A DNA stretch of 64,000 bases. It comes from Vitrella brassicaformis CCMP3155 (lineage: Eukaryota > Protista > Chromerida). A program made the translations under genes and the position numbers. Below, piece after piece: positions 5,230 through 60,079 of this stretch; positions within the stretch are counted from its first letter, which is position 1; each line of letters opens with the position of its first letter. The stretch covers positions 62,001 to 126,000 of the forward strand of contig CDMY01000022.1 of assembly GCA_001179505.1 (NCBI GenBank), in the 5' to 3' direction. The notes under the pieces are model-generated. The model was not told where the DNA came from, made no database searches, and was given only the letters and a program-made list of their open reading frames with translations.

Positions 5230-5837
5230 ATGGCACCGTCTGTGGCGTTTGTCGCCCTCTTGCATCTCTCGCTGAGCACGGCGTTCTGCCCTCCCCACGC
5301 CACACACATACGCACACGCCTCACCCCACCCCAGCCACTCCTCTCCCACACACAAGGGGACCAGACCAATGTAAGGCAACGCACACGCGCCTGGCACACA
5401 CAGACATGGAAAGCATCGCTGTCACGGCTGTGCTGTGCTGTGCTGTGCTGTGTTGTGTTGTGTGTGTGTGACCATCCATCTATCCCTCCCTCCCTCAATT
5501 GACCATATGTCAGGCGCTGGCCAAGTATGGCCACCTTCAGGCTGAGATCGACGCCTTGAAGCGGAAGGAGGCCGAGATCATGGGGGTGATCGGGGGGGAG
5601 CAGAAGGACACGCTGCTGTCGTTCTTCCCGTGGCGCAAGATCCTCTACGCCAACCAGCTGAGGGAGATTGAGAAGGAGATCGACTGGCGCAGGGAGGAGC
5701 AGCGCCAGCTGCAGATGGTATGTATATATGGTCATTTCTGCGGCCAACAAGAGGGAGGGACACGGCTGTGTGTGTGCCTGCGTGTGTGTGTGTGTGTGTC
5801 TTCTCAGGAGTACTACGAATTGTTGCCAAGCGAGTGA
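5230..5837 (+). CDS. Small plastid-targeted coiled-coil hypothetical protein (exons 5230-5370, 5514-5717, 5808-5837)
   Basis: MAPSVAFVALLHLSLSTAFCPP has a signal peptide with an AF cleavage motif. Phase-0 GT-AG introns give ...GDQTN|ALAKYGHLQAEIDALKRKEAEI...RQLQM|EYYELLPSE*. Confidence 0.7.
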
Positions 5838-6619
5838 CTGGACACGTACACACACATCTAATCTGGGTTGGGTGCTCGGATGAGATGAGACTTCGGTGCA
5901 GGGCAGAGGCAAAGAGACGAGGGCGTATGTTGCTTAGGAAGAGATTGGTATCGTATCTATTAGATAGATTGATGAGTGAGGGAGCCAAGAGGGAGAGCGT
6001 CCCTCCCTCAACGAAACACGACAAGACTGAGTGGATCGATCAGTAAGGAAGGTGGGATGGGCCGGCCGGGGAGTGCGTGGAGCCACCGGATGGTTTGCTT
6101 GTTTTTCCGACTGACATCTTTTGTACATACGTCTGTCTATCTGTGTGTGTATGTGTCTGTATGGGTCACAGAGAGAGGGAGAGAGAGAGAGAGAGAGAGG
6201 AGCCACACGCACGACGCCTACTTAGTCAGTGGCTGTCTGTGTGGCCTTGAGCTTTTTCCTATCCTCTGCCTGCGACTGACTGAGCGAGAGAGAGAGGGAG
6301 AGAGTTGCCGGCTCGATCTTTTTGGTTCTGACATGTCATGTGTGTACCGTAGGTATGTGGCGAATACGAGCTCGGGGCAGAGACCCCCAGACGGACAGAC
6401 ATGAGTGAGTGTAGCTAACTCTTTTTCCGTCCCGACACACACGAGCGCTCATTGATTGATTCATCGACACGGCGCGATGCAATCAGTGTCCTCTCCGCCA
6501 CACAAGCGATTGAATGTACACCTTGAATGTATTGTATCCACAGCCACAAACGCGTCACGAAAGCAGACAGACCAGATCGTCCCTAGCTGCAGCCATATCC
6601 ATCCATCGGTTGGCCTCAG

Positions 6620-26381: not shown

Positions 26382-28329
26382 ATGCGGCGATTGGCGAGAG
26401 ACCTGAGGCTTGCAAGGCCTTCACGCGATGAGCTGTGGTCCCACTACAGGAGGAGGCCGCATCGGCATGTCAGCATCCCGGCGGCCAAATCAACACCATC
26501 GCATGGGCACCAGCAGCTGCCTCTGCTGCGTCTGCACCACCGGCAGCAGCGCGGATCTGCCCCGTGCCCTTTTCCCGACGACGGTAGATTGATGACCGAG
26601 GCGGCCTGGACGACACTGTCAAGCCGACCTGTCACTGCACCAGGTGTCCAGCTGTCAGCAGCAGAGGCACCATGCGCCTCGCGCGCACCAAGATCCCCCC
26701 TCCCTCCCTCTCTCCACCACCACCACCCGCCACGGCGGTGGCCAGTCCACCACCGCTGCCACGGCACATTTGTCAGCCGTCGGCTGATGTCGTCGTCATC
26801 AGCCGCAGCCGAGCGGCGTGGTGAGCCAGATGCCGACACGGACGAGGGCGCGACGCCTTTCCGTGAGAGGCTGGCGGGGGACGTGGGTGTGTCGAGTGAG
26901 CATGACGCGAAGCGGCTGGTGCTGGGTTTGTCATCCGACGAGCGGCTGATGTTCGAGCGTGCGCTGGTCAAGGTGCGGGAGGACGAGGCGTGGCGCGCGA
27001 GGAAGGGCGGCGGGCAGCTGCACCCCGTTGAACACGAGTGCCAGGCCGACCAGATATTTCAGACCATTGACGACAACAAAGGCAAGCCACCCCACCACAC
27101 ACCACGCTCAGCACACGCAGCGCATCGTTGTTCCTTCCTTGTGTGTGTCAGATGGGTTCGTCTCTCGTCGGGAGTTCCGCAACTTCTACAACAGCATCGT
27201 GTTGCCGGCTCGTGAGGTTCAGCAGGCCAAGGTGTCTGAGCTGAACCACCAGCTCAACCAGCTCAAGGCCTGGCGCGACAGACAGGGGGAAGGGGCCCAT
27301 GCCGCCCCGGGAGCCGATGGCTCAGCAGGGGAGGGCATCACGTCCAACCAGCTGGCACTGGTGCTCATCAGGGGCATGATTCCCTATATCGGCTTCGGGC
27401 TGTGCGACAATGCTGTGAGGGAGATACACACACCACACATGGAGAGAGAGAGAAGAACGGCGTCTCTGTGTGTGTGTGTGTGTGTGTTTGGTCGATTGGG
27501 TCGTTTGCTCGTTTGTTGGTTTGGTTCCTTCAGCTGATGCTGGTGGCTGGTGAGTGGATAGACAAGACCGCTGGGGCCGCATTCTGCCTCTCCACACTCG
27601 CGGTGAGTGGGGTGGGTCAAGGGGTCGGTCGGCAACACAACACACGCAATCACAGGAACCGTCCGAGAGCTGCCCTTCCTGGTTTGTCCATAACGGTTTC
27701 CTTAATGAATGCAGTCTGCCGGCTTCGGCAACCTGATCAGCTGCGCGACCGGTGTGGTCACCGGCGGGTTCATCGAACGCTTCTCATACCAAATCGGTGG
27801 GTGAATGCATTGCCCGGCCTCAGTACTTGACCCGGGCGGCTGCACCGGTGCTGCCCTAGGCAGACACGCTTCGCTGTGTACCGGCTGTTCAGGTGTTCCG
27901 TCTCCCAACTTGACCCCCCAGCAGGCCGAGTCGCAGTCCGTCAAGAACCTGCACATCATCGGATCGGTGCTCGGCATCTGCGTCGGGTGAGTGAGCCGAC
28001 AGAGCCACACCACACTCTCAGCTTTGCACGGCACCTGTAAAACCAGGAATGCATAGCAGTGCTATGGACGCACTCTGTCGCACGAGTCAGTTGGTCTGTT
28101 GGTTGTTCTCGTCCTCTCCGTGGCTGGTCTGGTCGGTTCATTCAGGTGCTTCATCGGTATGTTTCCGCTGTACTTTCTCCCGACGGCCAACGGCAACGGC
28201 CATGGCAACGGCGGCCATGGCAGTGGCAGGGGGCACTGCACACTGGACAATGCCGCTGTCAAGGCGGGAGACGACGAGTGTGCCAAGGCTGCTGCTGGTG
28301 CTGCTGCTGCTGCTGCTGCAGAAAAGTAG
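26382..28329 (+). CDS. Mitochondrial TMEM65-family protein with an N-terminal EF-hand
   Basis: Arg-rich presequence MRRLARDLRLARPS. A GC-AG intron (27082-27151) joins IFQTIDDNK|DGFVSRREF into a canonical EF loop. TMEM65 motifs: MIPYIGFGLCDNALMLVAGEWID, LSTLAAAGFGNLIS, GSVLGICVGCFIGMFPLYFL. Confidence 0.85.
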
Positions 28330-28741
28330 CTAGGAGGTAGACTGGATGGGTGTGCGATTGATGTGCACAGCCAGTAGACGATGGACGGATGGACGGACGG
28401 ATTGGGCAGCTCGCCCATGACTGACGAATGTGCTGCTGATGTGACAGACACACAGACACAGAGACATGCGTGTGTGTGGAGTGAGTGGCCGAATGACAGA
28501 CCAGCTAACGTATCGATAGTTGGTCCTTCTCTCTATAAGTGTCTGTGTGTCACACGAGTCTTTTTGATTGATCTCTTTCTGTCTGACTCGACTCTGATGT
28601 TGATCGATCAATGGTAGCCAGCCGGATGGATGTCCACTCACGATCCAAACACGCTCAGCTCACGTGACTGACGTGGTTTGGCGTCTTCCCTGCAGACACC
28701 AACACGCCAACACGCAACACGCAACACGCCCCCCCCCCCCC

Positions 28742-29041
28742 NNNNNNNNNNNNNNNNNNNNNNNNNNNNNNNNNNNNNNNNNNNNNNNNNNNNNNNNNNN
28801 NNNNNNNNNNNNNNNNNNNNNNNNNNNNNNNNNNNNNNNNNNNNNNNNNNNNNNNNNNNNNNNNNNNNNNNNNNNNNNNNNNNNNNNNNNNNNNNNNNNN
28901 NNNNNNNNNNNNNNNNNNNNNNNNNNNNNNNNNNNNNNNNNNNNNNNNNNNNNNNNNNNNNNNNNNNNNNNNNNNNNNNNNNNNNNNNNNNNNNNNNNNN
29001 NNNNNNNNNNNNNNNNNNNNNNNNNNNNNNNNNNNNNNNNN
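28742..29041. other. Assembly gap (N run) flanked by poly-C
   Basis: 300 N. Confidence 1.
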
Positions 29042-29449
29042 CCCCCCCCCCCCCCACACAGTGCTCCAGCACAAGAAACACCAGACGGAGGGTGCGAGCC
29101 AGATGTCACGTCACAAACCGCTCCACTGCCTGTCTCTCCATCCCTCAAGCTCTCTACGCTAAATGACGACGACACACAACGCATCACATAGCCAGACAAC
29201 ACAAGACAACGATCCGTCCCCCTCTCTCTCTCTCTCTCTGTATCCCTCCCCACCGCCAAACATTAGAAAAGCCCACAAACGAACGGACTGAACTGACTGA
29301 GTGGTTCGTTGGGGCAGGCCTGGCTCCGCCACACATGAGACACTCGCGCGGTGATCCACCTCCTCTCCCCACTGCCGTCCGTCTTTGCAGTTCAAGATGG
29401 AATAGGAAGACTACTTTGGGATGACAACTGACTACTTGTGAGTGTCTTA

Positions 29450-32400
29450 TCAGGGGAGTCTACTCGGTCGGTCGTTGTACTCCTTCACTCCCCCGGCAGC
29501 TGCAGCTGCTTGACCGGCGTGGCCGTCCTCACCAACACCGTCAGAGACACAGCCTGGGTCGTCACCACGGACACACACACACACACACACACAGAGACAG
29601 AGAGAGAGAGAGAGAGAGGATTCCAGCGCGCGTCTTGTTGTGGGTGTGGGTGTCATATCTGTGGGTGTGGGTGTGGCTGCCTACGGTGGTGAGGATGGTG
29701 CATGCGATGCAGGGCACGAAGGCCACTATGGCCAGGGCCATCACCGCCACCGCACTCCGGTCCTGACGCCACCACTGAATGCGCACCCACACCGACACTA
29801 CACACACACACACACACAGCCAGAAGATCCCCGAGCTGCAGCGATTGTGTTCGTGTCTGTCTGTCTGTGTGTCCTACGCGAGAAGGCCAGCCCGACGATG
29901 CCGGCCAGGCATGTGCCCAGCAGAGTGGTCAGCTCCACGACATGAGGGATGAGCTGCGACACCACCACGGGCACACCCACAACAAACAGGGTCGAGGCGA
30001 TGTACTCTAACACCTCCAGCGCTGGTAGGACAGACAAAACACACACACACACACACACACAGAGAGATAGAGCGAGAGAGGTTCGCTTATTCGCTCCCTC
30101 TGTCGTGTCTTTTCTCCCGTGCGTAGCTTACGCTGCAGGTCTTCAATGGGTTCGATCATATCCATGGCGATCCCATGCCACCCCCCGCTCCCACTGGCCG
30201 TGTGCGTCAGCCCACAGCTGCCGTTCAGCCCCGAGCTGCTCGCACTGACCCCGCTGCTGCTGCGGGCAAACCCGCCCTCGCGCCGCCCCTCCCGCCTCAC
30301 CGAGCGCTCGAGGTGCGGCAACAAACTGTCGCTCACAGTGCGGACGGGGCGGTCGGCATCGTCGGGGTGCTGGGTGTCTCTGTCTCGTGGCAGCAGAGGC
30401 TCCCTCGGCCCCTCACCGCCCTCGACAGGGGTGCGGCTTCTTGCTATGGGTGAGGTGGACAGCGGGCGGGGCCGCTCCCTCTTGGACGCGCGAAAGATGC
30501 CGCGTGAGTTGCGGATGCTCGTGGCGGTGACGCCCCGGCGCTTGAATGAGGGCCTGGAGAGAGAGGCCGGGAGAGAGGCCGCACCCGGCTGGCTGGCCGT
30601 GCCGTTAGAAGGTGTCCCCTCTGCGTCCCCTTGGTCGAGGGGGAATGGCGGCAGCGCCGGCACTCCTGACCCACCCTCGCCCTCGCCCCCCTCCTGCCCG
30701 ACCAGACTGGCCTCACTGCCGCTGTGGCTGCCGGGGAGTGGCCCGCCTCGTATGGCCGCCTCGAGGGCACTCATGACGGGCTGCATCCGTCGCATCGTCT
30801 CGCTGTTGATGCTGCCCTGACCAGGGCTGCCCAGACCAGACGAGGGGCGGACGGGGGCCGCGCCAGAAGCCGAGTGCGGCGACTGACCTGAGCCGTCCTG
30901 AATGAGCAAGTCGATTGAGCTGCCGCCACCGCTGGCCACTACCCCGGCGCCAAGGTCCCCTGGACGGGTGTGGCCACGACCCTGCACAAACACACAGCAC
31001 ACAACAGACAGACACACAGAGACACACACGTGGTGCGTGCGCATTGAAGAGAGAGGGAGACAGTGTGATGAATCCATCCATAACTTGATGATACCCACCC
31101 ACCGGTGCTTCATCCCGCCGAGCAACAGCCACGTTGGATCCCCATGTAGCCGCGTCACTGTCATTGTTCTGTGACGCCCGCTGACGCAATGTGACGCCGC
31201 GGCGGTGGGAGGAGTGGCGTGTGCCGTGTGCGCGGTGGGGTGAGTCGGGAATGACGTCTAGGCGGGGGAGGGATGACGGGGCGAAAAAGTGTGGCGACCT
31301 GTGGTCGAAAGGCGTCGGCAGGGTGGCGGGGCCGCCAGCCAAGTACTCGACGGAGAGGTATGCTGAGTGGCGGTGGCTGTGCTGCATGGGCAGCTGGGTT
31401 GCCTGCGGGCTGGCAAGCACACACGTCTGGTCTATCCTGCGGGGGGGGACACACACGGCAGGCAGGGCACACACAGGACAGACAGGGGGATGGATCAACA
31501 CAAACACACAACACACACACACACAAACACACATCGGCCGGCGATGGATCTGATCACCAGGGCCACCCGACCCACCTGGTATCAGTGGCCGCCGTGTACA
31601 GCTCCCCGGTTCGCCACATTTTGCCGAAGAACATGAGTGTGGACCTCAGCATTTGGCTGCACAGCGCCAGGCTACTCACCATCCCGCAGCAGTACACCAC
31701 CCTGCCCACCGTAAGGCTGTACGCCCCCACTATCCACACCGCTCTCCGCCACCCCGTGGCCCAATCACCACCGGCACTCTCCATCTTCTTTTTCGTAATG
31801 GTCGACCCTCGCAGCAGCGGGGGCGGCGGCGATTGGTGTGCTTCCGACGGCACCACTGGCACCTCCTCCAGGTCTAGCAGGCTGAACGAGGCGGCCACGG
31901 CCAGTGCGACATAGAAGAGGGTCTGAATGGCTGTGCTGACGGCCAGGAGGCCGATCACCCGAGCCTTCGACGGGGAGGCGATCTGCCCGAGCACGTTGAA
32001 AAAGTGTCGGTGGCAGCAGAAGAAAAACAGGATCACGGCCAAGGCAGCGGCGTGGTCCATCATCAGCTGGAGGGGCCGCGGAATCCCCTTGACCGTCGGC
32101 AAGCGGCAGCCCTGATGGCCATCGCCATGATCGCTGGCGTGATCGTGCCAGTTCATCGTGGGGTCGGTGGTGCCGTCCTCACTGATTATGTCGGCGTACA
32201 GCCACTCCCCTCGTGTCACGTTCGCCGTAGTGCCGCCATGGGAGAAGCCGCCGCCAGTGCCACGAGGCATCCCCAGCCCCGTGGCGTCATCGAACGGCTG
32301 CCGATCCACTGCCGTATGAGAGGATGGCAGCGGGATGGCACTCACAATGACGGCGATGACAGCGAGCAGCAGCGTGGCGGCGAGGGTGAGCCGTCTTGTC

Positions 32401-33452: not shown

Positions 33453-34066
33453 ATGAAGTGTGCGGCAGCTGCCATCTTCATCGCCCTGTCCTCCGTACTC
33501 CGCGATGCCGCGGCATTCGTCGTGCCCACCCCCCTCTCCCTCCCCTCCCGCCAGCTGTCGCTGCCATCCCCCCTCCCGCCCTCCCCCTCCCCGTCCCCCT
33601 CTCGCAACTTGCTGACGATGAAGGCGCACCCCAACTTTCGCAAGGGCAACACGCAGCGGCTGGGGCGGGCTGCGGACCAGAGGAAGGCGCTCCTGCGGTC
33701 CCTCACGACGGCCTGCCTCAAGTATGGGAGCATCCGGACGACCGAGGCCAAGGCCAAGCAGGCGGCGCGGCACGTTGACAAGATGATTGGTCTGGCCAAG
33801 AGGGGGGACCTGCACGCATTCAGGCAGGCCCTCGGGTGGCTCTACGACAAAGATCTCACCTTCAGAGTCTTTGAAGCGGTCAGCCAGTCAGCCACACTGC
33901 ACTGGTCAGACAGTTGAGTCAACAGAGAGAGATGTGTGTGTGTGTGTGTCGTGTGCAGGCTCCGGCTCGTTATGCGGAGAGGCGGTGTGGTTACACGAGG
34001 GTGAAGCTGATACAGAAGCAGCGGAAGGGCGACAACGCAAGGATGGCCATACTCGAGCTCGTCTAG
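33453..34066 (+). CDS. rpl17: Plastid 50S ribosomal protein L17, nucleus-encoded (2 exons)
   Basis: Bipartite leader MKCAAAAIFIALSSVLRDAAAFVVP; RLGRAADQRKALLRSLTTACLKYGSIRTTEAKAK...APARYAERRCGYTRV...RKGDNARMAILELV*. Confidence 0.97.
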
Positions 34067-34490
34067 TGTGGCTGAGCTGCTGCATCGCCCACATGGGCAA
34101 TGCCATGTGGATGGATGGATGGATGATTGGATGCAGTGCACTGCTCTCCAAGAGAGACGCGCGACGGACCTCACCGCTGACCGAACCGATGGGACGGGTG
34201 TGATCTAACGTCATTTCAACCACCTCTGGGGCGTGTGTGTTGCAGTGCAGAGATCCCATCCATCGATGAGTCACCTTACCCACCCACCTGCCGGTTAATT
34301 CAGCTGAGTCTGCATGGCAACTGACTGACGACAAACACATTACACACACCAGCTGGCACCAGCCATCACCATGCACCACTCACCATGCGCACTGATCATC
34401 AACCAACCAACACATGAATGACGCATTTATCCAACTCACTCCAACCGAATCACTGCTTTCTTCCAGCTGCAGGCAAGACCCCTTCCCCCC

Positions 34491-34790
34491 NNNNNNNNNN
34501 NNNNNNNNNNNNNNNNNNNNNNNNNNNNNNNNNNNNNNNNNNNNNNNNNNNNNNNNNNNNNNNNNNNNNNNNNNNNNNNNNNNNNNNNNNNNNNNNNNNN
34601 NNNNNNNNNNNNNNNNNNNNNNNNNNNNNNNNNNNNNNNNNNNNNNNNNNNNNNNNNNNNNNNNNNNNNNNNNNNNNNNNNNNNNNNNNNNNNNNNNNNN
34701 NNNNNNNNNNNNNNNNNNNNNNNNNNNNNNNNNNNNNNNNNNNNNNNNNNNNNNNNNNNNNNNNNNNNNNNNNNNNNNNNNNNNNNNNNN
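34491..34790. other. Assembly gap (N run) flanked by poly-C
   Basis: 300 N. Confidence 1.
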
Positions 34791-35949
34791 CCCCCCCCAC
34801 ACAGAGAGAGAGAGAGAGAGGAAGAGAGAGGCGACGTAGCCTCCCTCTCGCACCCGCCCACCCCCACATCCATACCCACACCAGTTGAGCTCATCACGTC
34901 CGGCAGCCAGTTGTGGAAAATTAAAACTTACGCAAGAGAGAGGGGCAACACAATGAACGGCTGCGCCGGGGCGTGGTGGGGTTGAGGCAGACAGGCAGAC
35001 AGGCACACTCGGCAAAATCGTGCAGTGTCCGGTGTCAGTCGATCTTGTTACGAGATGGGGGGGATCGTGCGCAGGAAACAGCCGATACACATGCAAAAAA
35101 TACATGCCAGTGAGTGTGCACGGGGGGAGGGGAGGGGAGAGGGAAGGAGAGTAGGTACGCCTGTGGGGTGAGCACCTGTCGGCCTGGCCTCTCTGGGTGT
35201 GTGTGTGGGTGTGCCTGCCTGAATCCATCTGACTGTCTGTCTCCTCTCTGCGGGTAAGTGAGTGAGACAGCAGTGAGAGCACGCAGCTGTCTGTGCGTGC
35301 CCTTCTAATATGTAAGTGACTCCGTCCCCGTGTGCAAAACATACACAGTCGCCTGCCCGTCTGCCAGCCTGCCTGCCTGCCGTTTGTTCGCTAGCTGGAG
35401 TGAGTGGAGTCGTCATCCATCGGCGTGGCGTGGTGTGTGTGGTGCGTCTTGCGTGCCAACCACAGACAGCCTATGGATGGATGGATGGATGGAGGATAGA
35501 TGGACAGCCTCAATCGAGAGTCCTGGTCTTGACATGGTCTCATCCATCTCTCAAAATACGTAGAGAAGGTCGCCCCACACCCTCACACCACACGCCAACA
35601 GCACATCTCGCACTGCGTCCCTGCCTGCCTGCCTGGCTGGCTGCCCGCCTGCCTAGCGGGCTCAGCGACGGACAGGCACACAGAAAAAATGTGGCTGGCA
35701 AGTAGGTGGCTTGTGCCAGCTCTCGACCTTCGCACCGCACACACCGCAGTCCATCCCCCTCTCACCCCTGACTCCCTCCCTCCCTATACACGCACACATC
35801 ACATCTGTCATTGCATCAAATCACCCATATCAAGGACAGAAAAGAAGCCCCCGGCGCGCACAACAACAAGCACGCTGGTGCCACCCTTCATAGTCAGGTC
35901 AGGTAGCCAGCAGGGACCCCCACAATGGGCAGGCAGGAAGGAAAAGTCG

Positions 35950-38548
35950 TCACTTGGCTGCTGATGCCTTGGGGATGTACTTCTGCTTGGTGGACGATGC
36001 GGCGGACGCCTGGGAAGCGGCGGTATCGTGTTGGCCGTCGGCCGCCCCGCACACGTCAGCAGCAGCGCTGTCCTGCGTCCGGTGCCCACCGCCGCTGTTG
36101 TTGCCGTTGCCGTTGCCGCGCCCCCGCCCGCCTCCAGCCACACCCCCACTGCCGTTCCCCCTGGTGGCCACGAGACCCCTCCCCCTGCCGCCCCTGTATC
36201 CCCCGCCGCCCCCACCCCGCTGCTGGCCAGCGCCGTCATGCGGCCCTCCCTGCGGCCCCCATCCCCCTCCTGACCCACCCGCCAGGTCTGTGTCTTTTGA
36301 TGGCCACCCGGGATGGCGGTTCTTGTTAGGGGGGGGTCGTGGGTGGGGGTGGGGGTAGCCCTGCTGCTGGAAGTGGTCAGGGTTGGGGGACTGGTCGAGG
36401 GTGGGGGAGCGGTCTGGGCCGGTGGAGTAGATGGGCCGCAGGCGGTGCTGGTCGCGGGGGAAACGGGTGCGGCCTCGGGGCGGCTTGCCCGTCAGACCAA
36501 ACTGACGATTCACCTGACAGACAGGCGACACGCATGGCCAATGCAACGCAGACACTGTCTGTCTGTCTGTCTGCGTGTTGGTGGTGTGCAGTGCATGTCA
36601 TGTCACCAGTCAGTGCCTGTCTGTGCATACCATACCTGCTCCATCTCTTCGTCGATCTGGAAGAGGTCCCGCTCCATGTCAGAGTACACCTGCATGGATT
36701 GGATGGATGGATGGCCGACAGAGAGGCAGACGATGGATGGATGGATGGATGGATGGTTCGATCCCTCCCTCCCTCCCTCACTGTTTCTTGTGCTCACCTC
36801 TCTGTACTGGAGGTGGGTTTCAATCATCATCTTCGCCAGCGATACGTTGGCCCGCTTCCCGCACAACTCGTAGCTACACCGGTCGGGGTGGTACCTACAC
36901 CAACACCACACACACCACAAACACCACACAACACACGGCACAAAGTGCACAAACCCATCAGGCTTGCCCCGTCCCCCCCCTCCCTCCTTTGCAGCCGTAC
37001 GTACGTCATTTTGAAGATGCCGGACGTCTCGGCCACCTCCCTCTCAGACACCCGCCCCTTGTTGTGGTAGTGCATACGCCTGAACGGCCTCTCGCCACGC
37101 CCACCACCACCACCGTATGGGGGCGAGCCGTCATCGTCTCGCGGGCGGGGCGGGTTGAGCCACATGAACTCATCCTTGGTGAGGGTCACATGCTCGCTCA
37201 CGAACTCAAAAGCCGCCCTGGCGCGCTCCAGGGTGTCTTGGGAGGGGCCGAATATCCTGACCTTCGCCATGCCGTCAACAGGGTCCAACACGCGAATATC
37301 AACCTGACAATAGCGACAACGTGTGTGTGAGCATGTGTGTGATAGAACCGACCGATCTCGCCCACCCACCCACCTCGAAGTCGCTTTGGATCTGCTTGAT
37401 GTGCTCTCCGTTTTTGCCGATGTGCATGCCGACCATGCTCTCGGCCACCTCGAATTCGAGCTGCTCGCTCTCCTCGTACTTGGTGCGGCGGGTCTCGAGG
37501 GCCTTGAGCTGCAGCGCCCGGCTGTGGTTGTGCTTCTGAATGTGTGCCAGGTGGTTCATGTGGATATCCAGCATCATGAGCCCACGATCCAACGCCTTGG
37601 GGAAACCCAGCAGCACCAGGATCGGCACCTCACGAGTGCTGCCGCCCGACCCCTGGCTGCCGCTGCCACTGGTGGCAGCCCCGACCCCGCCCTCCTTGCC
37701 ACCATTGTCCTTGCCCGACGCCTCCGACCCGCCGTGAGACGCGCCAGACCGCTCGGGTGCGTGGTTGTCGGTGGCCATGGTGACGATGCGGGCCTGGCCG
37801 ACCCGCTTGTGGTGGTCCCCTCGGTGCCCCCCACCGGTAATGGGCGCGTGTTTGACGAGTATGCGGAGGAGACCGGCCTTTGCAGCGATCTGGTCGAGCT
37901 TGCCCCTGGCCTCCTCGGTGTCCAGCCAGTGGTGGAGTATCTCGGGGACCTCCCTGGAGCGTCGCTGAATCTTGGACCAGTCGACGCGCTCCATGGCGTT
38001 GAGCGGCCGCAGCCGATCCTTCTCGACGATCAGAGCTGGCGAGCCGTCAAACGAGACGAAGTAGAAGCCGTTCTTGATGTTCTGCAGGACGCCTTTCTGC
38101 CAGTAGGGGGGCGACTCGGGGCTGGAGGGGAAGGACACCTCGACACAGTCGCCCTCGTTGGGCTGCAAGTGCTGCGTGGCGATGGCGGGGTCGGACGCCC
38201 GCCGGATGGACGTGCCGCTCACCTCCCGCTCCGCCCACACGTCGCCCTCGAACCGAACCAACACCGTGTTGTCCGAGGGAAGGTCCTCAACAGTCACGGC
38301 ATACCTGCACACACCAGGCAGGCGGGCAGGTAGACAGACAGATGGAGACCATGACGTCATCCCTCCCTCCTCTGTCTGTCTGTCTTCTGCGTATCTGGCT
38401 GCCCTGCCCTGCCCACCGCACAGACCCATACGTACCAGCGGTCTCTTGTTCGCGTGGAGGCGGGGTAGGTGGGCGTGGAGGAGCCTGAGCCGGAGAGTGC
38501 GCCGCCTTCGAGGTCCAGGTTGACCTCGAACTTGGTGCTGCTCTCCAT
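35950..38548 (-). CDS. FMRP/FXR-like RNA-binding protein: tandem Agenet/Tudor, KH0, KH1, degenerate KH2, helix, RGG-rich tail
   Basis: Colinear by eye with FMR1: MESSTKFEV...YAVTVEDLPSDNTVLVRFE...NEGDCVEV...YWQKGVLQNIKNGFYFVSF...IVEKDRLR; REVPEILH; RGLMMLDIHMNHL; EFEVAESMVGMHIGKNGEHIKQI; RIFGPSQDTLERARAAFEF; YELCGKRANVSLAKMMIETHLQY...DLFQIDEEMEQV; GYRGGRGRG tail. Confidence 0.85.
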
Positions 38549-43170: not shown

Positions 43171-44241
43171 TCATGCACCCATCCATGGCTGTCTACTACA
43201 CTGCACCCTTCGGCTTGTCGGTTGTATCTTTTGGGCGGGCGGTTCACGTTGAGGCGAATGGCTTGTCGGCCCACTCTGCCCACTTCTTCGAACCTGCTCC
43301 ATACATGTCATGAATCCATCTGTGTCGTGCGGTGGATGACTCATTTTACCAGGAAGGTAGAAGTTGTATGCGGTCTCGGTGTCGCCCTCCACCACGTAGG
43401 CCGTGGCCGAGTAGTTTCCCGAAATGGAGCCGGTTGAGCCCTCCGGGAGGGTCGCCTTGGCAAGGTTCGGGCGCTCCCGGTACTAAATCCAAGCATATAG
43501 ACGCATTGCATGTGTGGGTAATCTCCTTTGACTCTCTCGCTGGGCACCTGGGGTTTCAAGGTGCACATCATTCCGCCCTGCTCTGCCGTCTCCTCGACCA
43601 CCCGCTGTTCGCCGCACATCTCCTCCGCGGTGGATTTGTCGATGCACTTGCCGCGGAATACCGGGCGAGTCTTGTAGAAATCCAACTGAATGATGTCAAA
43701 AGAGAGGAAGGGTCCCAGCGCGTGCATTATCAAACATGTGTGTGGACGGACCTCAAACTCGGTGTACGTGGGCCCAGTGTTGTACACAGCGCAGATCTGA
43801 TTCAAGCCCTCCTTGACTGTACAGGGGTCAACCATCTTGTGCGGGAGGTAGAAGAAGTTGACCGCACCCGGCGTCGTGGTGTGCTTCCGCGTCATCTGCA
43901 CGCGGCAGACCTGGACGGCCCCGGCATCGTCATGGTGACCTGCATCGTGCAACCATCAATTGCATGCATCACTTCCATGTCGTTGATTGTGGGCAGCAGC
44001 AATACTGCCGCAACCTACCTGCCTTGCCGGCCTCTGCAATGTGAGTTTCCGTGTGCAGGGAACCGCCCCATGCGGCAGCAGTGCCAACGAGGAGAACCAC
44101 CACCGCGACGGCGATCAACAGGCTCACGGGTTGTATTCTTACTGAAGATGGGCGAGCCAAACTAACACAACGGTGGCGACGAGAGACGAGAGAAGGCCCC
44201 CACGGCGTCGGGGCCTGCAGGCAGCCTCGCCGTCTCGACAC
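43171..44241 (-). pseudogene. Intronless, frameshifted relic of a secreted protein gene
   Basis: Signal-like LLIAVAVVVLLVGTAAAW, then coding-like text that hops frames (PTINDMEVMHAIDGCTMQV / VQVCRVQMTRKHTTTPGAVNFFYLPHKM...CVYMLGFS / PNLAKATLPEG...YNFYLPGK). No microsatellite introns. A-rich tracts at 43085-43126. Confidence 0.4.
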
Positions 44242-44928
44242 CTTTGGCCTCTTTGGAGGCCATATCCATGCTCAGATTGACCGATGAATCATTCATCCAT
44301 CGATCTTGGCAAGAAGGTCCAGAAGTGAATCATTCATTCAATCATTCGTTCATCACTGACTTATGCATCGGACGTGATTGAGAGACAAGAGAGACATGAA
44401 GACCGACAGTCAGAGACAGAGACAGAGACAGAGAGAGAGAATTACATACACAGAGAGAGAGAGAGAGAGAGAGAAGCGGGTCATTGCAGTTGTCCTCTTT
44501 GGCCTCTTCTGTGTCGATTCGTCGATTGCACATCATGATCATCTGGGAACGGACAACCTTCATACAATCGGACGTTGCCTCGGTGGGCAGCGAGGGCCTG
44601 GATAAAGGAGGGCAGGAGCCCACTGGCGGCCGGAAAATACCGGAAAACCGGAAACGGAGGCGCTCTCTGCCAGCCCAGCTGCCAAGAGACGAGGAGGCCG
44701 CATCGACAGATGAGGATGCGGGCGAGACGTGGGCCGATGCGCTCGACTTTGACGACTTGGAGCCAGATTACGATGCTGTAGATTGCTATAGTCGCCCGGC
44801 CTGTTTGCTTGCAGGATGGTTCCCCCGACGCTGCTTTGCTGCTGAACTGGGACAGGGATTTCTGCGTCTCTTTCTCCCTCTCTCTCTTTCTATGTGTGTG
44901 TGTGTGTGGGTGGGGGGGGGGGGTCTGT

Positions 44929-45228
44929 NNNNNNNNNNNNNNNNNNNNNNNNNNNNNNNNNNNNNNNNNNNNNNNNNNNNNNNNNNNNNNNNNNNNNNNN
45001 NNNNNNNNNNNNNNNNNNNNNNNNNNNNNNNNNNNNNNNNNNNNNNNNNNNNNNNNNNNNNNNNNNNNNNNNNNNNNNNNNNNNNNNNNNNNNNNNNNNN
45101 NNNNNNNNNNNNNNNNNNNNNNNNNNNNNNNNNNNNNNNNNNNNNNNNNNNNNNNNNNNNNNNNNNNNNNNNNNNNNNNNNNNNNNNNNNNNNNNNNNNN
45201 NNNNNNNNNNNNNNNNNNNNNNNNNNNN
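44929..45228. other. Assembly gap (N run); both flanks carry the same gtgtgtgtggg-t-poly(G)-tctgt sequence
   Basis: 44900-44928 and 45229-45258 are near-identical, suggesting overlapping contig ends. Confidence 0.95.
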
Positions 45229-46512
45229 GTGTGTGTGGGTGGGGGGGGGGGGTCTGTCTCTGCTGCATTGATTTGATTGACGCAGCTGGTGGAGTGGATG
45301 ACCAATGGGGTGCATCGAGTGCGTCAGTTCACTCAGCTGTGAATACCTGTCTGTCGTGGCCGGCCGGCCTGCGTTGTGCCGTCTTGTTTTCCGTTCTCTG
45401 TGCACTGATTGACGTGTGTTATCATACGCAGGTCGGTATGGGTGGATGTGACAAACACACGTGCTGGTTACTAACGTCAGTCTCTTCATGTCATGTTACT
45501 TACCATGCACCTCATGCACTTGACTTGATGTGCTTATGCGTCTATGGCCGGGTGGGTGCCTTTGGGACGTTCCCTCTCTTACACACTCACTCGATCGATC
45601 ATGCACACACACATCCAATCCATTGCTTGTCATCCATCCGATCTGGCAGCTTTCCCACCACACCCATCCATCACACACACCACACCCACCTACTTGCGCA
45701 CCGACCCTATCAGCCAGCCAGCCATGCAGGCCCATCCATCCATCCATCCATCCTGCGGGCATCACATCGAATGTGTACAGAAATACCAACCGAGAGAGAG
45801 ACAAGTGAGTCGACTGAATCCACCCCACCCCACCACACACAGCAACAGCAACGGCAAGCAGTGAGAGAGAGGGGTTCGTATGGAGTGGAGTGGGTGGCCG
45901 AGCGGGGTGAATGAGTGGGGAAGGAACGTGCAGACAAACACAACAGCCAGCCATTCGTGTGACCATTTTGCCCCTCCCTCCCTCCCTCCATCCATCCATC
46001 CACCCGTCGATCCCTGCTCAGTTGCGAGCAGAGAAGGAGAGGCCAGGCAGGGCAATCGATGGAAGAGGGCATCTGTGCAGTCATATGTGCGTTCTCTGCC
46101 TCGATATTCCTGAAGAAATCCGTGTGCATAAGAAAAGGACTTCTACGCTGTCTGTCTGTCTGTCTGTCTGTCTGACGGGCAGAAAAAGAGCTCGGATCGA
46201 TCAACGCAAAACGTAGCAAGTAAAAAGCAAAAATTTAGCAAGAGTGAGTGGTAGAGACAAAGAGACAGAGACAAAGAGAGAACGCCCGAAACAAAGCCCC
46301 CCAGATCGGAGAGAGCGACAGGGAGTGTAAACGACGCAACACATCCAGCCCCCATCCCATTCCTGCCTGCCACGCATCGCATCGCCGAACCAGCCAGCCA
46401 GTAAGTCAGTGGGTCAGCCCATTTGTTGCCCCTGCCTGCCCGCCCCGCCATATCCATGGTTATGCCTCCCTCTTTCGGCGGGTCCATCCAGCCAGCCAGC
46501 TCAATCAGTCAA

Positions 46513-57607: not shown

Positions 57608-58106
57608 CTAAAAATGAGGCGGATCAACTCGACCGCTCAGTTTGTAGTGGTCCTCGGGGAAGAGATTGCGGATGTAGGCGATGCTCGAGAGGCTGGCGCG
57701 GAGAGCATTACGGATCACTGAACGAAAGATAAAGATTAGACAACACATGTACAGGCGTGAGTGACCACGTGTGCGTGTGGCCGGGTGATTGTGTGGTGAG
57801 TGATTGTGTGCCGACGGCATAGCGATTGCGTGCCGCTGATAGTGGATGCTCTCCGCGATAGGGACTGCATAGTGAGCACTGACACACAGACAGGCTGGCA
57901 GGCAGGCAGGCAGACAGGCACACAACGGTATGTGCCTTGAACCATCAGTGACGACATGATTGGTTCTGTGTGTGAGGAGAGCTGGAATGCTAGTCGAGGC
58001 ACGTGAATGAGAGTGGATGTGTGAATGACTGACTGACTGACACATCATGGCCATGAATGAAGCCTGATGGTGGCGACTTCTGCTGGGTGGCCTGAGCCGT
58101 TGCCAT
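57608..58106 (-). pseudogene. HOP1: 5' fragment of a meiotic HORMA-domain gene (HOP1/HORMAD-like): exons 58106-58044, 57864-57816, 57717-57634
   Basis: Spliced: MATAQATQQKSPPSGFIHGHD|SLSRRASTISGTQSLC|LIRNALRASLSSIAYIRNLFPEDHYK, matching the Hop1/ASY1/HORMAD helix A motif. No further HORMA exons; read-through stop at 57608. Confidence 0.7.
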
Positions 58107-58379
58107 TTGCACTCTTTCAATGCGACGCGACAAGAGAAGAAAGCCAATCAATCAATCAATCAATCGATCACTTATCACTGATCACTGAATGAATCGTTGC
58201 TCTTTGCAAAATCGATCTCATTAATGCGTAAGCGACACTGACGTATGCGACTAATCTAACGAATTCCCGATCGATCGTCCGTTGGTTGACCCAGCCTCCG
58301 TGTGTCTGTCTGTCTGTCTCTGTTCGTCACTTGTCTGTCTTCAGTCCATGGACGCTGGGCACTCCTTCGAACGAACGCT

Positions 58380-59084
58380 CACGTGTCGAGCTGGCTCTTG
58401 GGTGAGACACCTCCACACACACCGACTCATACCTGCACACACATACTTCCTCGTGCTGTGCTGCTCTCACACAAACACGACACACACGTCTTTACTTGGC
58501 GTGTGTGTGGTTGAGTTGCTGTTTGGTGTGGGTGAGCTGCGCCGCGAGTGTGGACTCGGCCTCACGCACACGCATCAGCTCGTCAGACAACTCACTCACC
58601 TACACGGACAGAGAGAGAGAGAGAGAGGTCAATGGCTGCATCTGCCCGGTGTCTCTCTCTGTCTGTCTGTGTGTGACCTTCTTGTTGTGTTGCTGCTGGA
58701 GTGCATTGATTTGTGCGTCGTGTTGTTTGTTGAGGGTGGCAATCTGTCGGTCCATCTGGGTGAGCTGATCGTGGAGGGCCGCTGATGTCTCGATGAAGCT
58801 CTTCTCGTGCGCCTCCACGGCATCCGCCCGACCAGCCAACGAACACAACACACCCAACTCTGCAGACACACACAAACACGCACACACAGAGAGAGGTGTG
58901 AGTAAGCAACCAGTGCAGTGTGTGTGTGTGTCAATGGCGTGCCTTTGTCTTTGTCTTGTATGATGGCGAGTAGATCTTTGTGGCGCCCCTCCCCCTCCCG
59001 GATCTGCTTCTGCAGATCGCACCGACGGCGGGCGGCGATGAACGAGGCGTGCAGCTCGTCCACCTCTCGCAGCACACCCGACGC
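58380..59084 (-). pseudogene. Coiled-coil hypothetical gene, copy B (partial; 5' end in gap)
   Basis: Near-identical to ~51865-52475 (AHEKSFIETSAALHDQLTQMDRQ..., ELSDELMRVREAES..., KQIREGEGR...LLAIIQDKDK) but with different exon starts and a divergent 3' end. Confidence 0.6.
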
Positions 59085-59384
59085 NNNNNNNNNNNNNNNN
59101 NNNNNNNNNNNNNNNNNNNNNNNNNNNNNNNNNNNNNNNNNNNNNNNNNNNNNNNNNNNNNNNNNNNNNNNNNNNNNNNNNNNNNNNNNNNNNNNNNNNN
59201 NNNNNNNNNNNNNNNNNNNNNNNNNNNNNNNNNNNNNNNNNNNNNNNNNNNNNNNNNNNNNNNNNNNNNNNNNNNNNNNNNNNNNNNNNNNNNNNNNNNN
59301 NNNNNNNNNNNNNNNNNNNNNNNNNNNNNNNNNNNNNNNNNNNNNNNNNNNNNNNNNNNNNNNNNNNNNNNNNNNNNNNNNNNN
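59085..59384. other. Assembly gap (N run)
   Basis: 300 N. Confidence 1.
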
Positions 59385-59833
59385 GGATGCGGTCATCGAC
59401 CCACTGGCCCTCGAACACCGCACCGTCCGCGTAGCTAAACGTGCCCTGGCCCTCGCGCTTGCCGAACACGAACTCGCCCTCATACTTCTCGTTGCCTGCA
59501 CACACAGACCGACCCACCACACGCACACACACATACAACGGCACGTGGGTGGATGCATCAGTGGGTCGGTCCTCTCCCAGCCAGTGTGAGAGACCTACCC
59601 TGGTAGATGAGGGTGCCGCGGCCGTGGAAGAGACTGCAATGGCCACACAGAACGACAGAGAGCGTTTTGCGGTGGCCACTGGCGTCTGCTGTGCCTGCCT
59701 CACCCGTCCTTGATCTGGCCATGGTACGCGTTCCTAACGGCAGAAGAGGAAAACACGGAGGGCGCAAGAGATGAGGCATTTGGGGTGCGTGTGAGCCGAC
59801 TGTGTGTGTCCGTGAGCCTTACCCGGCCTCCAT
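59385..59833 (-). CDS. MORN1: MORN1 copy 3, 5' part only (ATG at 59833)
   Basis: MEAG|NAYHGQIKDG|LFHGRGTLIYQG|NEKYEGEF.... Positions 59385-59741 appear identical to 54800-55156 of copy 1. Confidence 0.8.
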
Positions 59834-60079
59834 CTCGAATCAGCCGAGCCCACGCGAGAGGGGTGCGAGAAAACCTGAAAAAGGCAAAGAAAACGACGAG
59901 AGAAGGCAACGATGTGCCGTGGTGAGCGTTCTGCTGCGTCATCTGTGGCACGGCACGGCACAGCATGTGCGCGTGTGCGCCATATCATCATCCACATGTG
60001 TGTTCGTGATCCGTTACAGTTCGATTGCGTAGTTTGGCTGTCCTGCTCCTCACACAGCATTCAGACACATCGGCCGGGC

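What the first reader, a model, noticed from the sequence alone, without database searches (positions are those of the whole stretch)
35950..38548. Full-architecture FMRP/FXR (fragile X) homolog in an alveolate
The spliced product aligns by eye, in order, with FMR1: Agenet 1 and 2, KH0 (REVPEILH ~ LDVPEDLR; MMLDIHMNHL ~ MLIDMHFRSL), KH1 (MVGMHIGKNGEHIKQI ~ LMGLAIGTHGANIQQA; FGPSQDTLERARAAFEF ~ YGEDQDAVKKARSFLEF), the post-KH2 helix (LFQIDEEMEQV ~ RLQIDEQLRQI) and an RGG tail. FMR1/FXR proteins are usually discussed as animal translational regulators. A colinear homolog here would imply a much older origin or a transfer. Whether it has already been described in alveolates I cannot check.
Basis: partly seen in the sequence, partly recalled or inferred. 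Interest (0 to 1): 0.75.

Follow-up and report, generated by a model that had tools for sequence, protein, structure and literature searches.

The report
Fragile-X-type RNA-binding protein in an alga
The alga Vitrella brassicaformis, a relative of malaria parasites, has an intact gene for a true relative of the human fragile X protein, which shows this RNA-binding family is far older than animals, although papers describe it as animal-only.

Summary
Confirmed. Window 35950-38548 (minus strand) holds a six-exon gene with GT-AG introns. Its 685-aa product is identical to the database protein CEL91788.1 / A0A0G4E989 of Vitrella brassicaformis, named only "KH domain-containing protein". A profile of its protist family matches human FMRP's Agenet1-Agenet2-KH0 structure (E 1e-36) and the FMR1 KH1-KH2 structure (E 3e-29). 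It aligns with animal FMR1/FXR1 in one colinear block of 371 columns, from Agenet 1 to the helix after KH2 (hhalign, probability 100%, E 9e-54). The predicted structure agrees.

Named relatives occur in chromerids, an apicomplexan, dinoflagellates, red algae and a cryptophyte; an Atlas cluster points to Perkinsus. In the tree, animals and myzozoans each form a separate clade with 100% support, so a recent transfer from animals is unlikely and an old origin is favoured.

This copy is the most derived of at least three full-length Vitrella paralogs:
- KH1 and an RG/RGG tail are intact.
- KH2's GXXG loop reads NKGR behind a unique 30-residue insert.
- KH0 carries a 74-residue disordered loop.
- The animal C-terminal core is absent.

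Two papers call FMRP animal-only, although database names for Porphyridium and Perkinsus proteins already hint otherwise. The scan reported the same conclusion earlier on two other stretches of this genome. Function is inferred from homology. Splicing could not be checked with reads.

The parts
38436..38548 (-). Exon 1. The ATG is at 38546-38548. It encodes residues 1-37 plus two bases of the Trp38 codon: the first strand of Agenet 1 and a roughly 20-residue disordered loop.
   Evidence: The translation equals P0001 residues 1-37. Model strand E7-10 and low pLDDT at 14-32.
38305..38435 (-). Intron 1 (131 nt, GTACGT...CAG).
37374..38304 (-). Exon 2 (residues 38-348): the rest of Agenet 1, Agenet 2, KH0, the long helix CC1 and the first half of KH1.
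   Evidence: phmmer against the PDB puts FXR1, FXR2 and FMRP Agenet structures on top. Pfam finds KH_1. hhalign. 100% match to P0001 residues 39-348.
38004..38536 (-). Tandem Agenet (Tudor-like) module: Agenet 1 at about residues 5-75 (crossing intron 1) and Agenet 2 at about residues 85-138.
   Evidence: Profile A3 against 4qvz, 3kuf and 3h8z, E 1e-36 to 2e-29. Foldseek gives TM 0.80-0.85 normalised to the FXR1/FXR2 Tudor structures.
37548..37970 (-). KH0, a non-canonical KH fold without GXXG, at about residues 150-290.
   Evidence: The A3 profile aligns through FMRP residues 126-212. hhalign. Model pLDDT is above 90 outside the loop.
37650..37826 (-). Lineage-specific disordered Gly/Ser-rich loop inside KH0. 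The model is below pLDDT 50 at residues 198-256. The 74-residue alignment loop is the longest of 47 family members (next longest 56, median about 4).
   Evidence: loop lengths; pLDDT below 50 at 198-256.
37470..37601 (-). Long helix between KH0 and KH1 (residues 273-316), positionally equivalent to FXR1's CC1.
   Evidence: Model helix H273-316, aligned to the FXR1 region around residue 202. FXR1 CC1/CC2 roles are described in 10.1101/2023.11.05.565677.
37407..37418 (-). KH1 GXXG motif, intact (GKNG, residues 334-337).
   Evidence: 41 of 47 family members keep GXXG here. Pfam KH_1 on P0001, E 1.9e-10.
37304..37373 (-). Intron 2 (70 nt, GTGGGT...CAG). It splits KH1.
   Evidence: The junction is gap-free against homologues.
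37005..37303 (-). Exon 3 (residues 349-447 plus two bases of the Thr448 codon): the second half of KH1 and the first half of KH2.
   Evidence: The only PDB hit is FXR1 KH1 (2cpq), weak on its own at E 0.88. hhalign..
37064..37153 (-). Insert of 30 residues rich in Pro, Gly and Arg (residues 399-428) in the KH2 GXXG loop. It is unique among the 47 aligned members and is shared only with the truncated paralog P0011.
   Evidence: loop length 32 against 2 or fewer in the other 46; P0011 sequence; low pLDDT in the 401-430 blocks, below 50 at 412-427.
37052..37063 (-). Remnant of the KH2 GXXG motif, now NKGR (residues 429-432).
   Evidence: Animal sequences have GKNG here.
36895..37004 (-). Intron 3 (110 nt, GTACGT...TAG). 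These were not sent to any search tool afterwards.
36798..36894 (-). Exon 4 (residues 448-480): the second half of KH2 and the start of the post-KH2 helix.
36690..36797 (-). Intron 4 (108 nt, GTGAGC...CAG), with GGAT and CCCT repeat runs.
36636..36689 (-). Exon 5 (residues 481-498): the core of the post-KH2 helix (CC2 equivalent, helix 462-502).
   Evidence: Model helix H462-502, aligned to FXR1 residues 347-383.
36514..36635 (-). Intron 5 (122 nt, GTATGG...CAG).
35950..36513 (-). Exon 6 (residues 499-685): the end of the helix and the disordered Gly/Pro/Arg-rich tail. The TGA stop is at 35950-35952.
   Evidence: pLDDT is below 50 from residue 510 on.
36112..36219 (-). RG/RGG box (residues 597-632: 2 RGG and 7 RG).
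   Evidence: Homologues carry similar RGG tails.

Best explanation
This is a native, intact nuclear gene of Vitrella brassicaformis for a member of the FMRP/FXR (fragile X) family of RNA-binding proteins. Shown: the protein has, in the animal order, two Agenet domains, the non-canonical KH0, a long helix, KH1, KH2, a second long helix and a disordered tail with an RG/RGG box. It belongs to a large protist family that is homologous to animal FMR1/FXR over this whole core. Inferred from what is known of FMRP and FXR1: it binds mRNA through KH1 (GKNG intact) and the RG/RGG tail. It pairs up or builds larger mRNA-protein assemblies through the Agenet-KH0 module and the two helices, which sit where FXR1's coiled coils CC1 and CC2 sit. 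It thereby regulates translation or storage of bound mRNAs in the cytoplasm. In this particular paralog, KH2 has probably lost classical nucleic-acid binding, because its GXXG loop now reads NKGR behind a unique 30-residue Gly/Arg/Pro-rich disordered insert. That insert may itself act as an extra RG-type RNA-binding or condensation element. The family is therefore much older than animals and nervous systems and was lost in many lineages.
For: - **Gene model:** the model equals the database protein. The protein is CEL91788.1 / A0A0G4E989 of V. brassicaformis, on a 208-kb contig.
- **Single-exon search:** exon 2 alone finds FXR1, FXR2 and FMRP as its best solved structures.
- **Family search:** 112 relatives at E<1e-3, 45 of them below 1e-10, colinear over about 400 residues.
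- **Profile against the PDB:** FMRP Agenet1-2-KH0 at 1.3e-36 (profile positions 5-222 on FMRP 5-212) and FMR1 KH1-KH2 at 3.2e-29. The best unrelated KH protein scores only 8e-14.
- **Profile-profile comparison with 12 animal FMR1/FXR1 proteins:** probability 100%, E 9.2e-54, 371 columns in one block covering FXR1 residues 4-383.
- **Predicted structure:** 325 residues have pLDDT of 90 or more. The top Foldseek hits are the FMRP N-terminal domain (TM 0.73-0.78 by target) and FMRP KH1-KH2 (0.66-0.69). The nearest Atlas clusters are all FMR1/FXR or the Perkinsus 'Fmr1-b protein' cluster.
- **Link to animals:** the phmmer search from exon 2 reached an animal-type FMRP directly (P0107, E 2.6e-4).
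- **Tree:** animals 100%, myzozoans 100%, red algae plus cryptophyte 95%.
- **Paralogs:** three full-length loci and truncated copies in the same genome.
- **Motifs:** KH1 GXXG intact, KH2 degenerate with a unique insert, RG/RGG box.
- **FXR1 coiled coils:** their role in dimerisation and network assembly is reported in 10.1101/2023.11.05.565677.
Against: - Function is inferred only from homology. No RNA-binding, localisation or expression data were obtained for this gene.
- Pfam's FMRP-specific models (Tudor_FRX1, KH_9) and the animal C-terminal core (PF12235) do not hit this protein; only KH_1 does.
- By alignment, Tyr103 of the animal Agenet 2 is not conserved (Pro127 in this protein, next to a gap). 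From memory, not checked here, Thr102/Tyr103 matter for methyl-lysine binding in FMRP, so the ligand of the Agenet module may differ.
- This copy sits on a long branch (1.65).
- dN/dS against its recent truncated duplicate is only mildly below 1 (0.66 overall, about 1.07 in the tail). Relaxed constraint on one of the two copies cannot be excluded.
Confidence: 0.85

Rival explanations
1. Convergent architecture: an unrelated Tudor/Agenet plus KH protein that only resembles FMRP because the same common domains were assembled independently.
For: Agenet and KH domains are widespread. Plant Agenet proteins and other multi-KH proteins also appear lower in the lists. Pfam's FMRP-specific models miss this protein.
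Against: One colinear hhalign block of 371 columns at E 9e-54 includes the FMRP-specific KH0 and both interdomain helices. FMRP/FXR structures outrank all other Agenet or KH proteins by 15 to 30 orders of magnitude. A sister protist clade passes Pfam Tudor_FRX1 and KH_9, which bridges the two groups.
Confidence: 0.02
2. Recent horizontal transfer from an animal, or animal contamination of the assembly.
For: Papers treat the family as animal-only (PMC4216185; PMC8868631).
Against: The gene sits on a 208-kb Vitrella contig, has GC-rich Vitrella-type sequence with five short introns, and has paralogs on at least four other contigs. Pairwise identity to FXR1 is only 20-23%. Animals form a 100%-supported clade on a long stem, and all named myzozoan sequences lie on the other side of a 100%-supported branch.
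Confidence: 0.02
3. The family is old, but myzozoans obtained it from their red-algal plastid ancestor by endosymbiotic gene transfer rather than by vertical descent.
For: Every named non-animal holder found here is a red alga or descends from a lineage with a red-type plastid: chromerids, an apicomplexan, dinoflagellates and a cryptophyte.
Against: The myzozoan clade does not nest within or beside the red-alga/cryptophyte clade. That clade groups with the animal-containing half of the tree across a 100%-supported branch. Only about 20 of 112 hits could be named, so the taxon pattern may be a sampling effect. The tree is unrooted.
Confidence: 0.12
4. Its main role is nuclear: the tandem Agenet module reads methylated histones or other chromatin marks, as in plant Agenet proteins and as proposed for nuclear FMRP, rather than controlling translation.
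For: The Agenet module resembles histone-binding tandem Agenet/Tudor structures (AGDP1, ADCP1, SHH1). FXR1 and FXR2 Tudor domains bind trimethyl-lysine peptides weakly (PMC2970552).
Against: The full KH0-KH1-KH2-RGG RNA-binding part is retained, and it is the best-conserved part of the family. By alignment the Tyr103 position of the animal Agenet 2 is not conserved here. No nuclear localisation evidence was obtained.
Confidence: 0.1
5. This particular paralog is under relaxed constraint or is taking on a new role. It may be an assembly or scaffold subunit with reduced RNA binding, while the canonical Vitrella copy P0003 does the ancestral job.
For: It has a long branch (1.65). It has the longest KH0 loop and the only KH2 insert among 47 members, and KH2 GXXG is lost. 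dN/dS is 0.66 against its recent truncated duplicate and about 1 in the tail.
Against: The reading frame, all splice sites and the conserved core residues are intact. The folded domains are predicted with pLDDT above 90. dN/dS in KH1 and KH2 is 0.38-0.54, below 1, though based on few changes. Loss of KH2 GXXG is common in the protist family (30 of 47), so it is not a sign of decay in itself.
Confidence: 0.2

Closest known systems
Animal FMRP / FXR1 / FXR2 (fragile X messenger ribonucleoprotein family)
   Same: Same order of Agenet1, Agenet2, KH0, helix, KH1, KH2, helix and a disordered RGG tail. One colinear profile alignment over 371 columns (E 9e-54). Best structural matches for both the N-terminal module and KH1-KH2.
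   Different: Only about 22% identity. No FXMRP1_C_core (PF12235). Pfam Tudor_FRX1 and KH_9 do not fire. KH2 GXXG is replaced by NKGR with a 30-residue insert, instead of the animal KH2 variable-loop insertion. KH0 carries a 74-residue disordered loop, and Agenet 1 has an extra loop. Tyr103 and Arg138 of FMRP are not conserved by alignment.
Vitrella brassicaformis paralogs P0003 (CEM18671.1, 511 aa) and P0016 (CEM00681.1, 583 aa), and Chromera velia Cvel_18060 (P0009)
   Same: Same family and architecture in chromerid algae. They fall in the same weakly resolved group of the tree.
   Different: They lack the KH0 and KH2 inserts, and P0003 is compact and more canonical. Identity to this protein is only about 29-34%.
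[quoted passage not shown]
   Same: Non-animal members of the same family that already carry FXR-like or Fmr1-like names in public annotation.
   Different: The red-algal proteins belong to the other half of the tree, together with a cryptophyte, unnamed protists and animals. I found no paper that discusses them.
Plant tandem-Agenet chromatin readers (AGDP1/ADCP1, AGDP3)
   Same: The tandem Agenet fold (Foldseek TM 0.63-0.69 by target; profile E about 1e-4).
   Different: No KH0, KH1, KH2 or RGG. Scores are some 30 orders of magnitude weaker than for FMRP.
Other multi-KH RNA-binding proteins (FUBP/KSRP, IGF2BP, hnRNP K, vigilin)
   Same: Type-I KH domains with GXXG.
   Different: They match only the KH1 part, at E 1e-13 or weaker, against 3e-29 for FMR1 KH1-KH2. 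They have no Agenet or KH0 module.

Membership tests
FMRP/FXR family | N-terminal tandem Agenet (Tudor-like) domains | tested here: met
   Exon 2 alone finds FXR1 3kuf at E 3e-4, and FXR2 and FMRP next. The family profile scores 5e-32 to 1e-36. Foldseek TM is 0.80-0.85 by target to the FXR1/FXR2 Tudor structures.
FMRP/FXR family | KH0: a non-canonical KH fold without GXXG directly after Agenet 2 | tested here: met
   The profile alignment runs through FMRP residues 126-212 of 4qvz. hhalign. The model matches 4ova/4qvz, which include KH0, at TM 0.73-0.78 by target. This copy carries a 74-residue disordered loop. Pfam KH_9 itself does not hit P0001.
FMRP/FXR family | Tandem type-I KH1 and KH2 domains, each with a GXXG loop | tested here: inconclusive
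   KH1 is met: GKNG, Pfam KH_1 at 1.9e-10. The KH2 fold is present and aligned to FXR1 KH2, and FMR1 KH1-KH2 2qnd scores 3e-29. However, the KH2 GXXG reads NKGR behind a 30-residue insert. Only 17 of 47 protist members keep GXXG in KH2.
FMRP/FXR family | Long helices after KH0 and after KH2 (CC1 and CC2 of FXR1) | tested here: met
   Model helices 273-316 and 462-502 have high confidence. They align to the FXR1 regions around residue 202 and residues 347-383. CC function is reported in 10.1101/2023.11.05.565677. Pairing itself was not tested.
FMRP/FXR family | Disordered C-terminal region with an RGG box | tested here: met
   Residues 597-632 hold 2 RGG and 7 RG. The tail is 23% Gly and 9% Arg and is disordered in the model. 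Homology of low-complexity tails cannot be shown.
FMRP/FXR family | Animal C-terminal core (Pfam PF12235 FXMRP1_C_core) and the family-specific Pfam models Tudor_FRX1 and KH_9 | tested here: not met
   There is no hit in P0001 or in any of 109 protist hits for PF12235. Tudor_FRX1 and KH_9 hit 10 and 6 of the 109, but not this protein. These models were built on animal sequences, so they define the animal subfamily rather than the fold order.
FMRP/FXR family | Best reciprocal similarity is to FMR1/FXR and not to other KH or Agenet proteins | tested here: met
   Forward searches put FMRP/FXR first. An animal FMRP-type protein (P0107) found from exon 2 retrieves annotated FMR1/FXR1 proteins. The animal profile aligns back over the whole core.
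FMRP/FXR family | Binds mRNA and polysomes and regulates translation | not testable with these tools
   This needs CLIP, polysome profiling or in vitro binding.

The most novel reading that the evidence does not exclude
The fragile X protein family, with its complete Agenet-Agenet-KH0-KH1-KH2-helix-RGG design, arose before the split of animals, alveolates and red algae, close to the base of eukaryotes. It was lost many times and expanded in myzozoans, organisms that rely heavily on post-transcriptional control. The window's paralog would then be a repurposed variant in which the RNA-binding loop of KH2 has been replaced by a disordered RG-rich insert, turning a KH groove into a condensation or RG-type RNA-contact element.
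Probability: 0.45. Interest if true: 0.7.

Novelty: new member of a known kind. Interest (0 to 1): 0.6.

Why it matters
FMRP is one of the most studied disease proteins. A review (PMC4216185) says the family arose with the cnidarian-bilaterian ancestor and its nervous system, and an 88-taxon survey (PMC8868631) calls it a metazoan gain. A full-architecture family in chromerids, an apicomplexan, dinoflagellates, red algae and a cryptophyte, with an Atlas lead to perkinsids, moves its origin back by a very long way and separates its core job from neurons. It also offers single-celled systems for asking what the ancestral function of the Agenet-KH0-KH1-KH2-RGG machine was. Chromera can now be transfected (title of PMC12407925, seen). 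The protist sequences give natural experiments too: KH2 without GXXG in most members, and this copy with an RG-rich insert in that loop.

Tried and rejected
- **Reads:** Splice junctions and expression of this gene are therefore unconfirmed by reads. Those places were not sent to any search tool afterwards. Loci L005 and L009, which genome search created and which contain them, were not used further.
- **Sequencing runs:** two runs guessed to be RNA hold 0.39-0.42 of the sampled words. This is a hint only.
- **Joining exons:** Searches of my model were done exon by exon by reference. The full-length sequence used later is the database protein P0001 returned.
- **Word searches:** the search with exon 2 found nothing in its length range. 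The search with profile A3 found only Vitrella paralogs.
- **Pfam:** on single exons it gave only a partial KH_1 hit. A scan of all 112 hits was over the size limit and was repeated with 109.
- **Atlas feature search with exon 2:** the top score was 0.84, which is a lead only.
- **dN/dS against the truncated paralog P0011:** 0.66 overall on few changes, so inconclusive for constraint.
- **Unnamed protist clade nearest to animals (P0083 group):** neither cluster look-ups nor the Atlas gave its organisms.
- **Papers:** ten searches found no paper describing non-animal FMRP homologues. The library does not cover subscription journals.
- **Rejected readings:** convergence, animal contamination and recent transfer from animals (see rivals).
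Full report
**Observation**

The minus strand of window 35950-38548 carries a six-exon gene. The exons are 38548-38436, 38304-37374, 37303-37005, 36894-36798, 36689-36636 and 36513-35950. The five introns are 70-131 nt long, all start with GT and end with AG, and keep the reading frame. I searched my model exon by exon by reference and did not join the exons myself.

The large protein search with exon 2 returned a database protein, P0001, of 685 residues that contains exon 2 at residues 39-348 with 100% identity. All six exon translations map onto it exactly and in order. P0001 is CEL91788.1 / UniProt A0A0G4E989 of Vitrella brassicaformis CCMP3155. It is named only "K Homology domain-containing protein" and lies on a 208-kb contig. 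The window is therefore from this chromerid alga, a photosynthetic relative of apicomplexan parasites.

**Is it FMRP-like beyond chance?**

Exon 2 alone, searched against all solved structures, finds FXR1 (E 3e-4), FXR2 and FMRP Agenet domains as its best hits. Exon 3 alone finds only the FXR1 KH1 domain, and weakly (E 0.88). Pfam sees only KH_1.

The exhaustive phmmer search found 112 relatives at E<1e-3, 45 of them below 1e-10. They are colinear with one another over about 400 residues. A profile of 47 full-length members (A3, this protein first) gave these results against the Protein Data Bank:
- Human FMRP Agenet1-Agenet2-KH0 at E 1.3e-36, with profile positions 5-222 on FMRP residues 5-212.
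- FXR1 and FXR2 Tudor structures at 5e-32 and 2e-29.
- FMR1 KH1-KH2 at 3.2e-29.
- The best unrelated KH protein (FUBP2) at only 8e-14, and plant Agenet proteins at about 1e-4.

A profile-profile comparison with 12 annotated animal FMR1/FXR1 proteins (A4) gives probability 100% and E 9.2e-54. It produces one block of 371 aligned columns from FXR1 residue 4 to 383, that is, from Agenet 1 through the helix after KH2.

An AlphaFold2 model built on A3 has 325 residues at pLDDT 90 or above. Its best Foldseek matches are the FMRP N-terminal domain including KH0 (TM 0.73-0.78 by target), the FXR1/FXR2 Tudor structures (0.80-0.85) and FMRP KH1-KH2 (0.66-0.69). The nearest ESM Atlas clusters by shape are all animal FMR1/FXR clusters or a Perkinsus cluster auto-named "Fmr1-b protein" (the same by features). 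The observation and the family assignment are therefore confirmed.

**Anatomy of this copy**

- Agenet 1 is at about residues 5-75, with an extra disordered loop at 11-32.
- Agenet 2 is at about residues 85-138.
- KH0 is at about residues 150-290. It is interrupted by a 74-residue Gly/Ser-rich disordered loop, the longest among the 47 members.
- A long helix spans residues 273-316.
- KH1 spans residues 318-388 and has an intact GKNG motif.
- KH2 spans residues 389-461.
- A second long helix spans residues 462-502.
- The tail of 183 residues is disordered and rich in Gly, Pro and Arg. It has an RG/RGG box at residues 597-632 (2 RGG, 7 RG).

In KH2 the GXXG position reads NKGR and is preceded by a 30-residue Pro/Gly/Arg-rich insert (residues 399-428). 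None of the other 46 aligned members has this insert. In the protist family as a whole, KH1 keeps GXXG in 41 of 47 members but KH2 in only 17 of 47. The animal sequences checked have GKNG in KH2 (consensus).

The animal C-terminal core (PF12235) is absent from this protein and from all 109 protist hits scanned. The Pfam models Tudor_FRX1 and KH_9 do not hit this protein, but they do hit 10 and 6 of the other hits.

**Distribution and origin**

Cluster look-ups gave organism names for about 20 of the hits.
- **Myzozoans:** Vitrella (P0001, P0003 and P0016 full-length; P0011 and P0119 truncated), Chromera velia, the apicomplexan Cardiosporidium cionae, and the dinoflagellates Yihiella, Polykrikos, Oxyrrhis and two Amoebophrya strains.
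- **Red algae:** Porphyridium purpureum and Erythrolobus madagascarensis. [quoted passage not shown]
- **Cryptophyte:** Hemiselmis rufescens.

One hit, P0107 (E 2.6e-4 from exon 2), is an animal-type FMRP. It passes KH_9 at 2e-22 and retrieves more than 2,000 annotated animal FMR1/FXR proteins at 37-50% identity among the best 120.

A quick maximum-likelihood tree of 52 sequences gives these groups:
- Animals form one clade (SH-aLRT 100) on a long stem.
- All named myzozoans lie on the other side of a branch with support 100.
- Red algae plus the cryptophyte form a group with support 95.
- An unnamed protist group (P0083 and relatives) lies nearest to the animals. Several of its members pass the FMRP-specific Pfam models.

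The Vitrella sequences do not nest inside animals, identity to FXR1 is about 22%, and the genome holds paralogs on at least four other contigs. Contamination or recent transfer from animals is therefore very unlikely, and an origin long before animals is the simplest reading. The tree is unrooted and most hits are unnamed. I cannot exclude that myzozoans got the gene from their red-algal plastid ancestor, but the tree shows no special affinity between the two groups.

**How it most likely works**

The fold order and the conserved motifs are shown. The rest is inferred from knowledge of FMRP and FXR1. The protein probably binds mRNA through KH1 and the RG/RGG box. The Agenet-KH0 module and the two helices probably serve for protein contacts and self-association. 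In FXR1, both coiled coils are needed for dimerisation, mRNA binding and network assembly (10.1101/2023.11.05.565677). The likely outcome is control of translation or storage of bound mRNAs.

In this copy KH2 has probably lost classical nucleic-acid binding, and its RG-rich insert may add a different kind of RNA contact. By alignment, FMRP Tyr103 in Agenet 2 and Arg138 in KH0 are not conserved (next to gaps), so the Agenet ligand may differ. That Thr102/Tyr103 matter for FMRP's methyl-lysine binding is my recollection and was not checked here.

I put membership in the family at about 0.95, RNA binding at about 0.85, and a role in translation or mRNA-protein granules at about 0.55.

**State of this paralog**

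It is the most derived of the Vitrella copies (branch length 1.65). A second gene, P0011 on contig C821, is a recent partial duplicate. It shows 210 of 270 identical residues from the end of KH0 to the start of the tail, with dS about 0.18. It shares the KH2 insert but lacks the Agenet and KH0 part. dN/dS between the two is 0.66 overall, 0.38-0.54 in KH1 and KH2, and about 1.07 in the tail, based on few changes. This is compatible with mild constraint and does not settle which copy is constrained.

**What is known**

[quoted passage not shown] A 2022 survey of 88 taxa, including 14 SAR and 6 Archaeplastida, lists FMRP as a lineage-specific gain of Metazoa (PMC8868631). Ten full-text searches found no paper describing non-animal homologues. 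The library lacks most subscription journals.

Public annotation, however, already names the Porphyridium protein and a Perkinsus cluster after FXR1/Fmr1. This scan reached the same conclusion earlier on two other stretches of the same genome, probably the other two full-length paralogs (s1-248723 and s1-221671). I therefore class the finding as a new member of a known kind. The point of interest is the family's age and range, plus the unusual KH2 of this copy.

**Limits**

Splicing and expression of this gene therefore rest on canonical splice sites, on identity with the deposited gene model, and on gap-free alignment of homologues across all junctions.
- Those places were sent to no search tool afterwards. 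Loci L005 and L009, which contain them, were left unused.
- No function was tested.

Noticed in passing
L008/L010 (G000:C821:4143-7714); protein P0011 (CEM34340.1, 1044 aa): A recent partial duplicate of the window's gene. 210 of 270 residues are identical from the end of KH0 through KH1, KH2 (including the same 30-residue insert) and the helix, with dS about 0.18. It lacks the Agenet and KH0 front, which is replaced by about 740 residues of low-complexity Ala/Pro/Glu-rich sequence. The deposited model may be a fused or mispredicted gene.
   Followed up: partly
Alignment A3 (47 protist FMRP-like proteins): KH2 has lost the GXXG motif in 30 of 47 members, while KH1 keeps it in 41 of 47. The animal sequences checked have it in both. 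This suggests that KH2 has a different role in the protist family.
   Followed up: partly
Proteins P0083, P0057, P0070, P0079, P0071, P0074, P0085, P0090 (Logan and JGI contigs): An unnamed protist group lies nearest to the animal clade in the tree. Several members pass Pfam's FMRP-specific Tudor_FRX1 and KH_9 models. The organisms could not be identified; they could be single-celled relatives of animals.
   Followed up: partly
window 36700-36790 (intron 4), 38320-38400 (intron 1), 36545-36580 (intron 5): The introns of this gene are full of short tandem runs: GGAT/TGGA repeats, CCCT repeats and GTCT repeats.
   Followed up: no
window 4001-6000, 28001-30000, 34001-36000, 44001-46000, 58001-60000: There are regular dips of G+C to 0.46-0.49 in a window that is otherwise 0.56-0.65. 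The dip at 34-36 kb lies just downstream of the gene's 3' end. These are probably intergenic stretches.
   Followed up: no
G000:C603:237609-237863 (L011; P0119, 372 aa), G000:C428:44639-44782, and G000:C385 and C677: There are further short matches to the KH1, KH2 or helix part of the family profile in the same genome. One has an in-frame TGA. They may be additional truncated or decayed copies, or unrelated KH genes.
   Followed up: no
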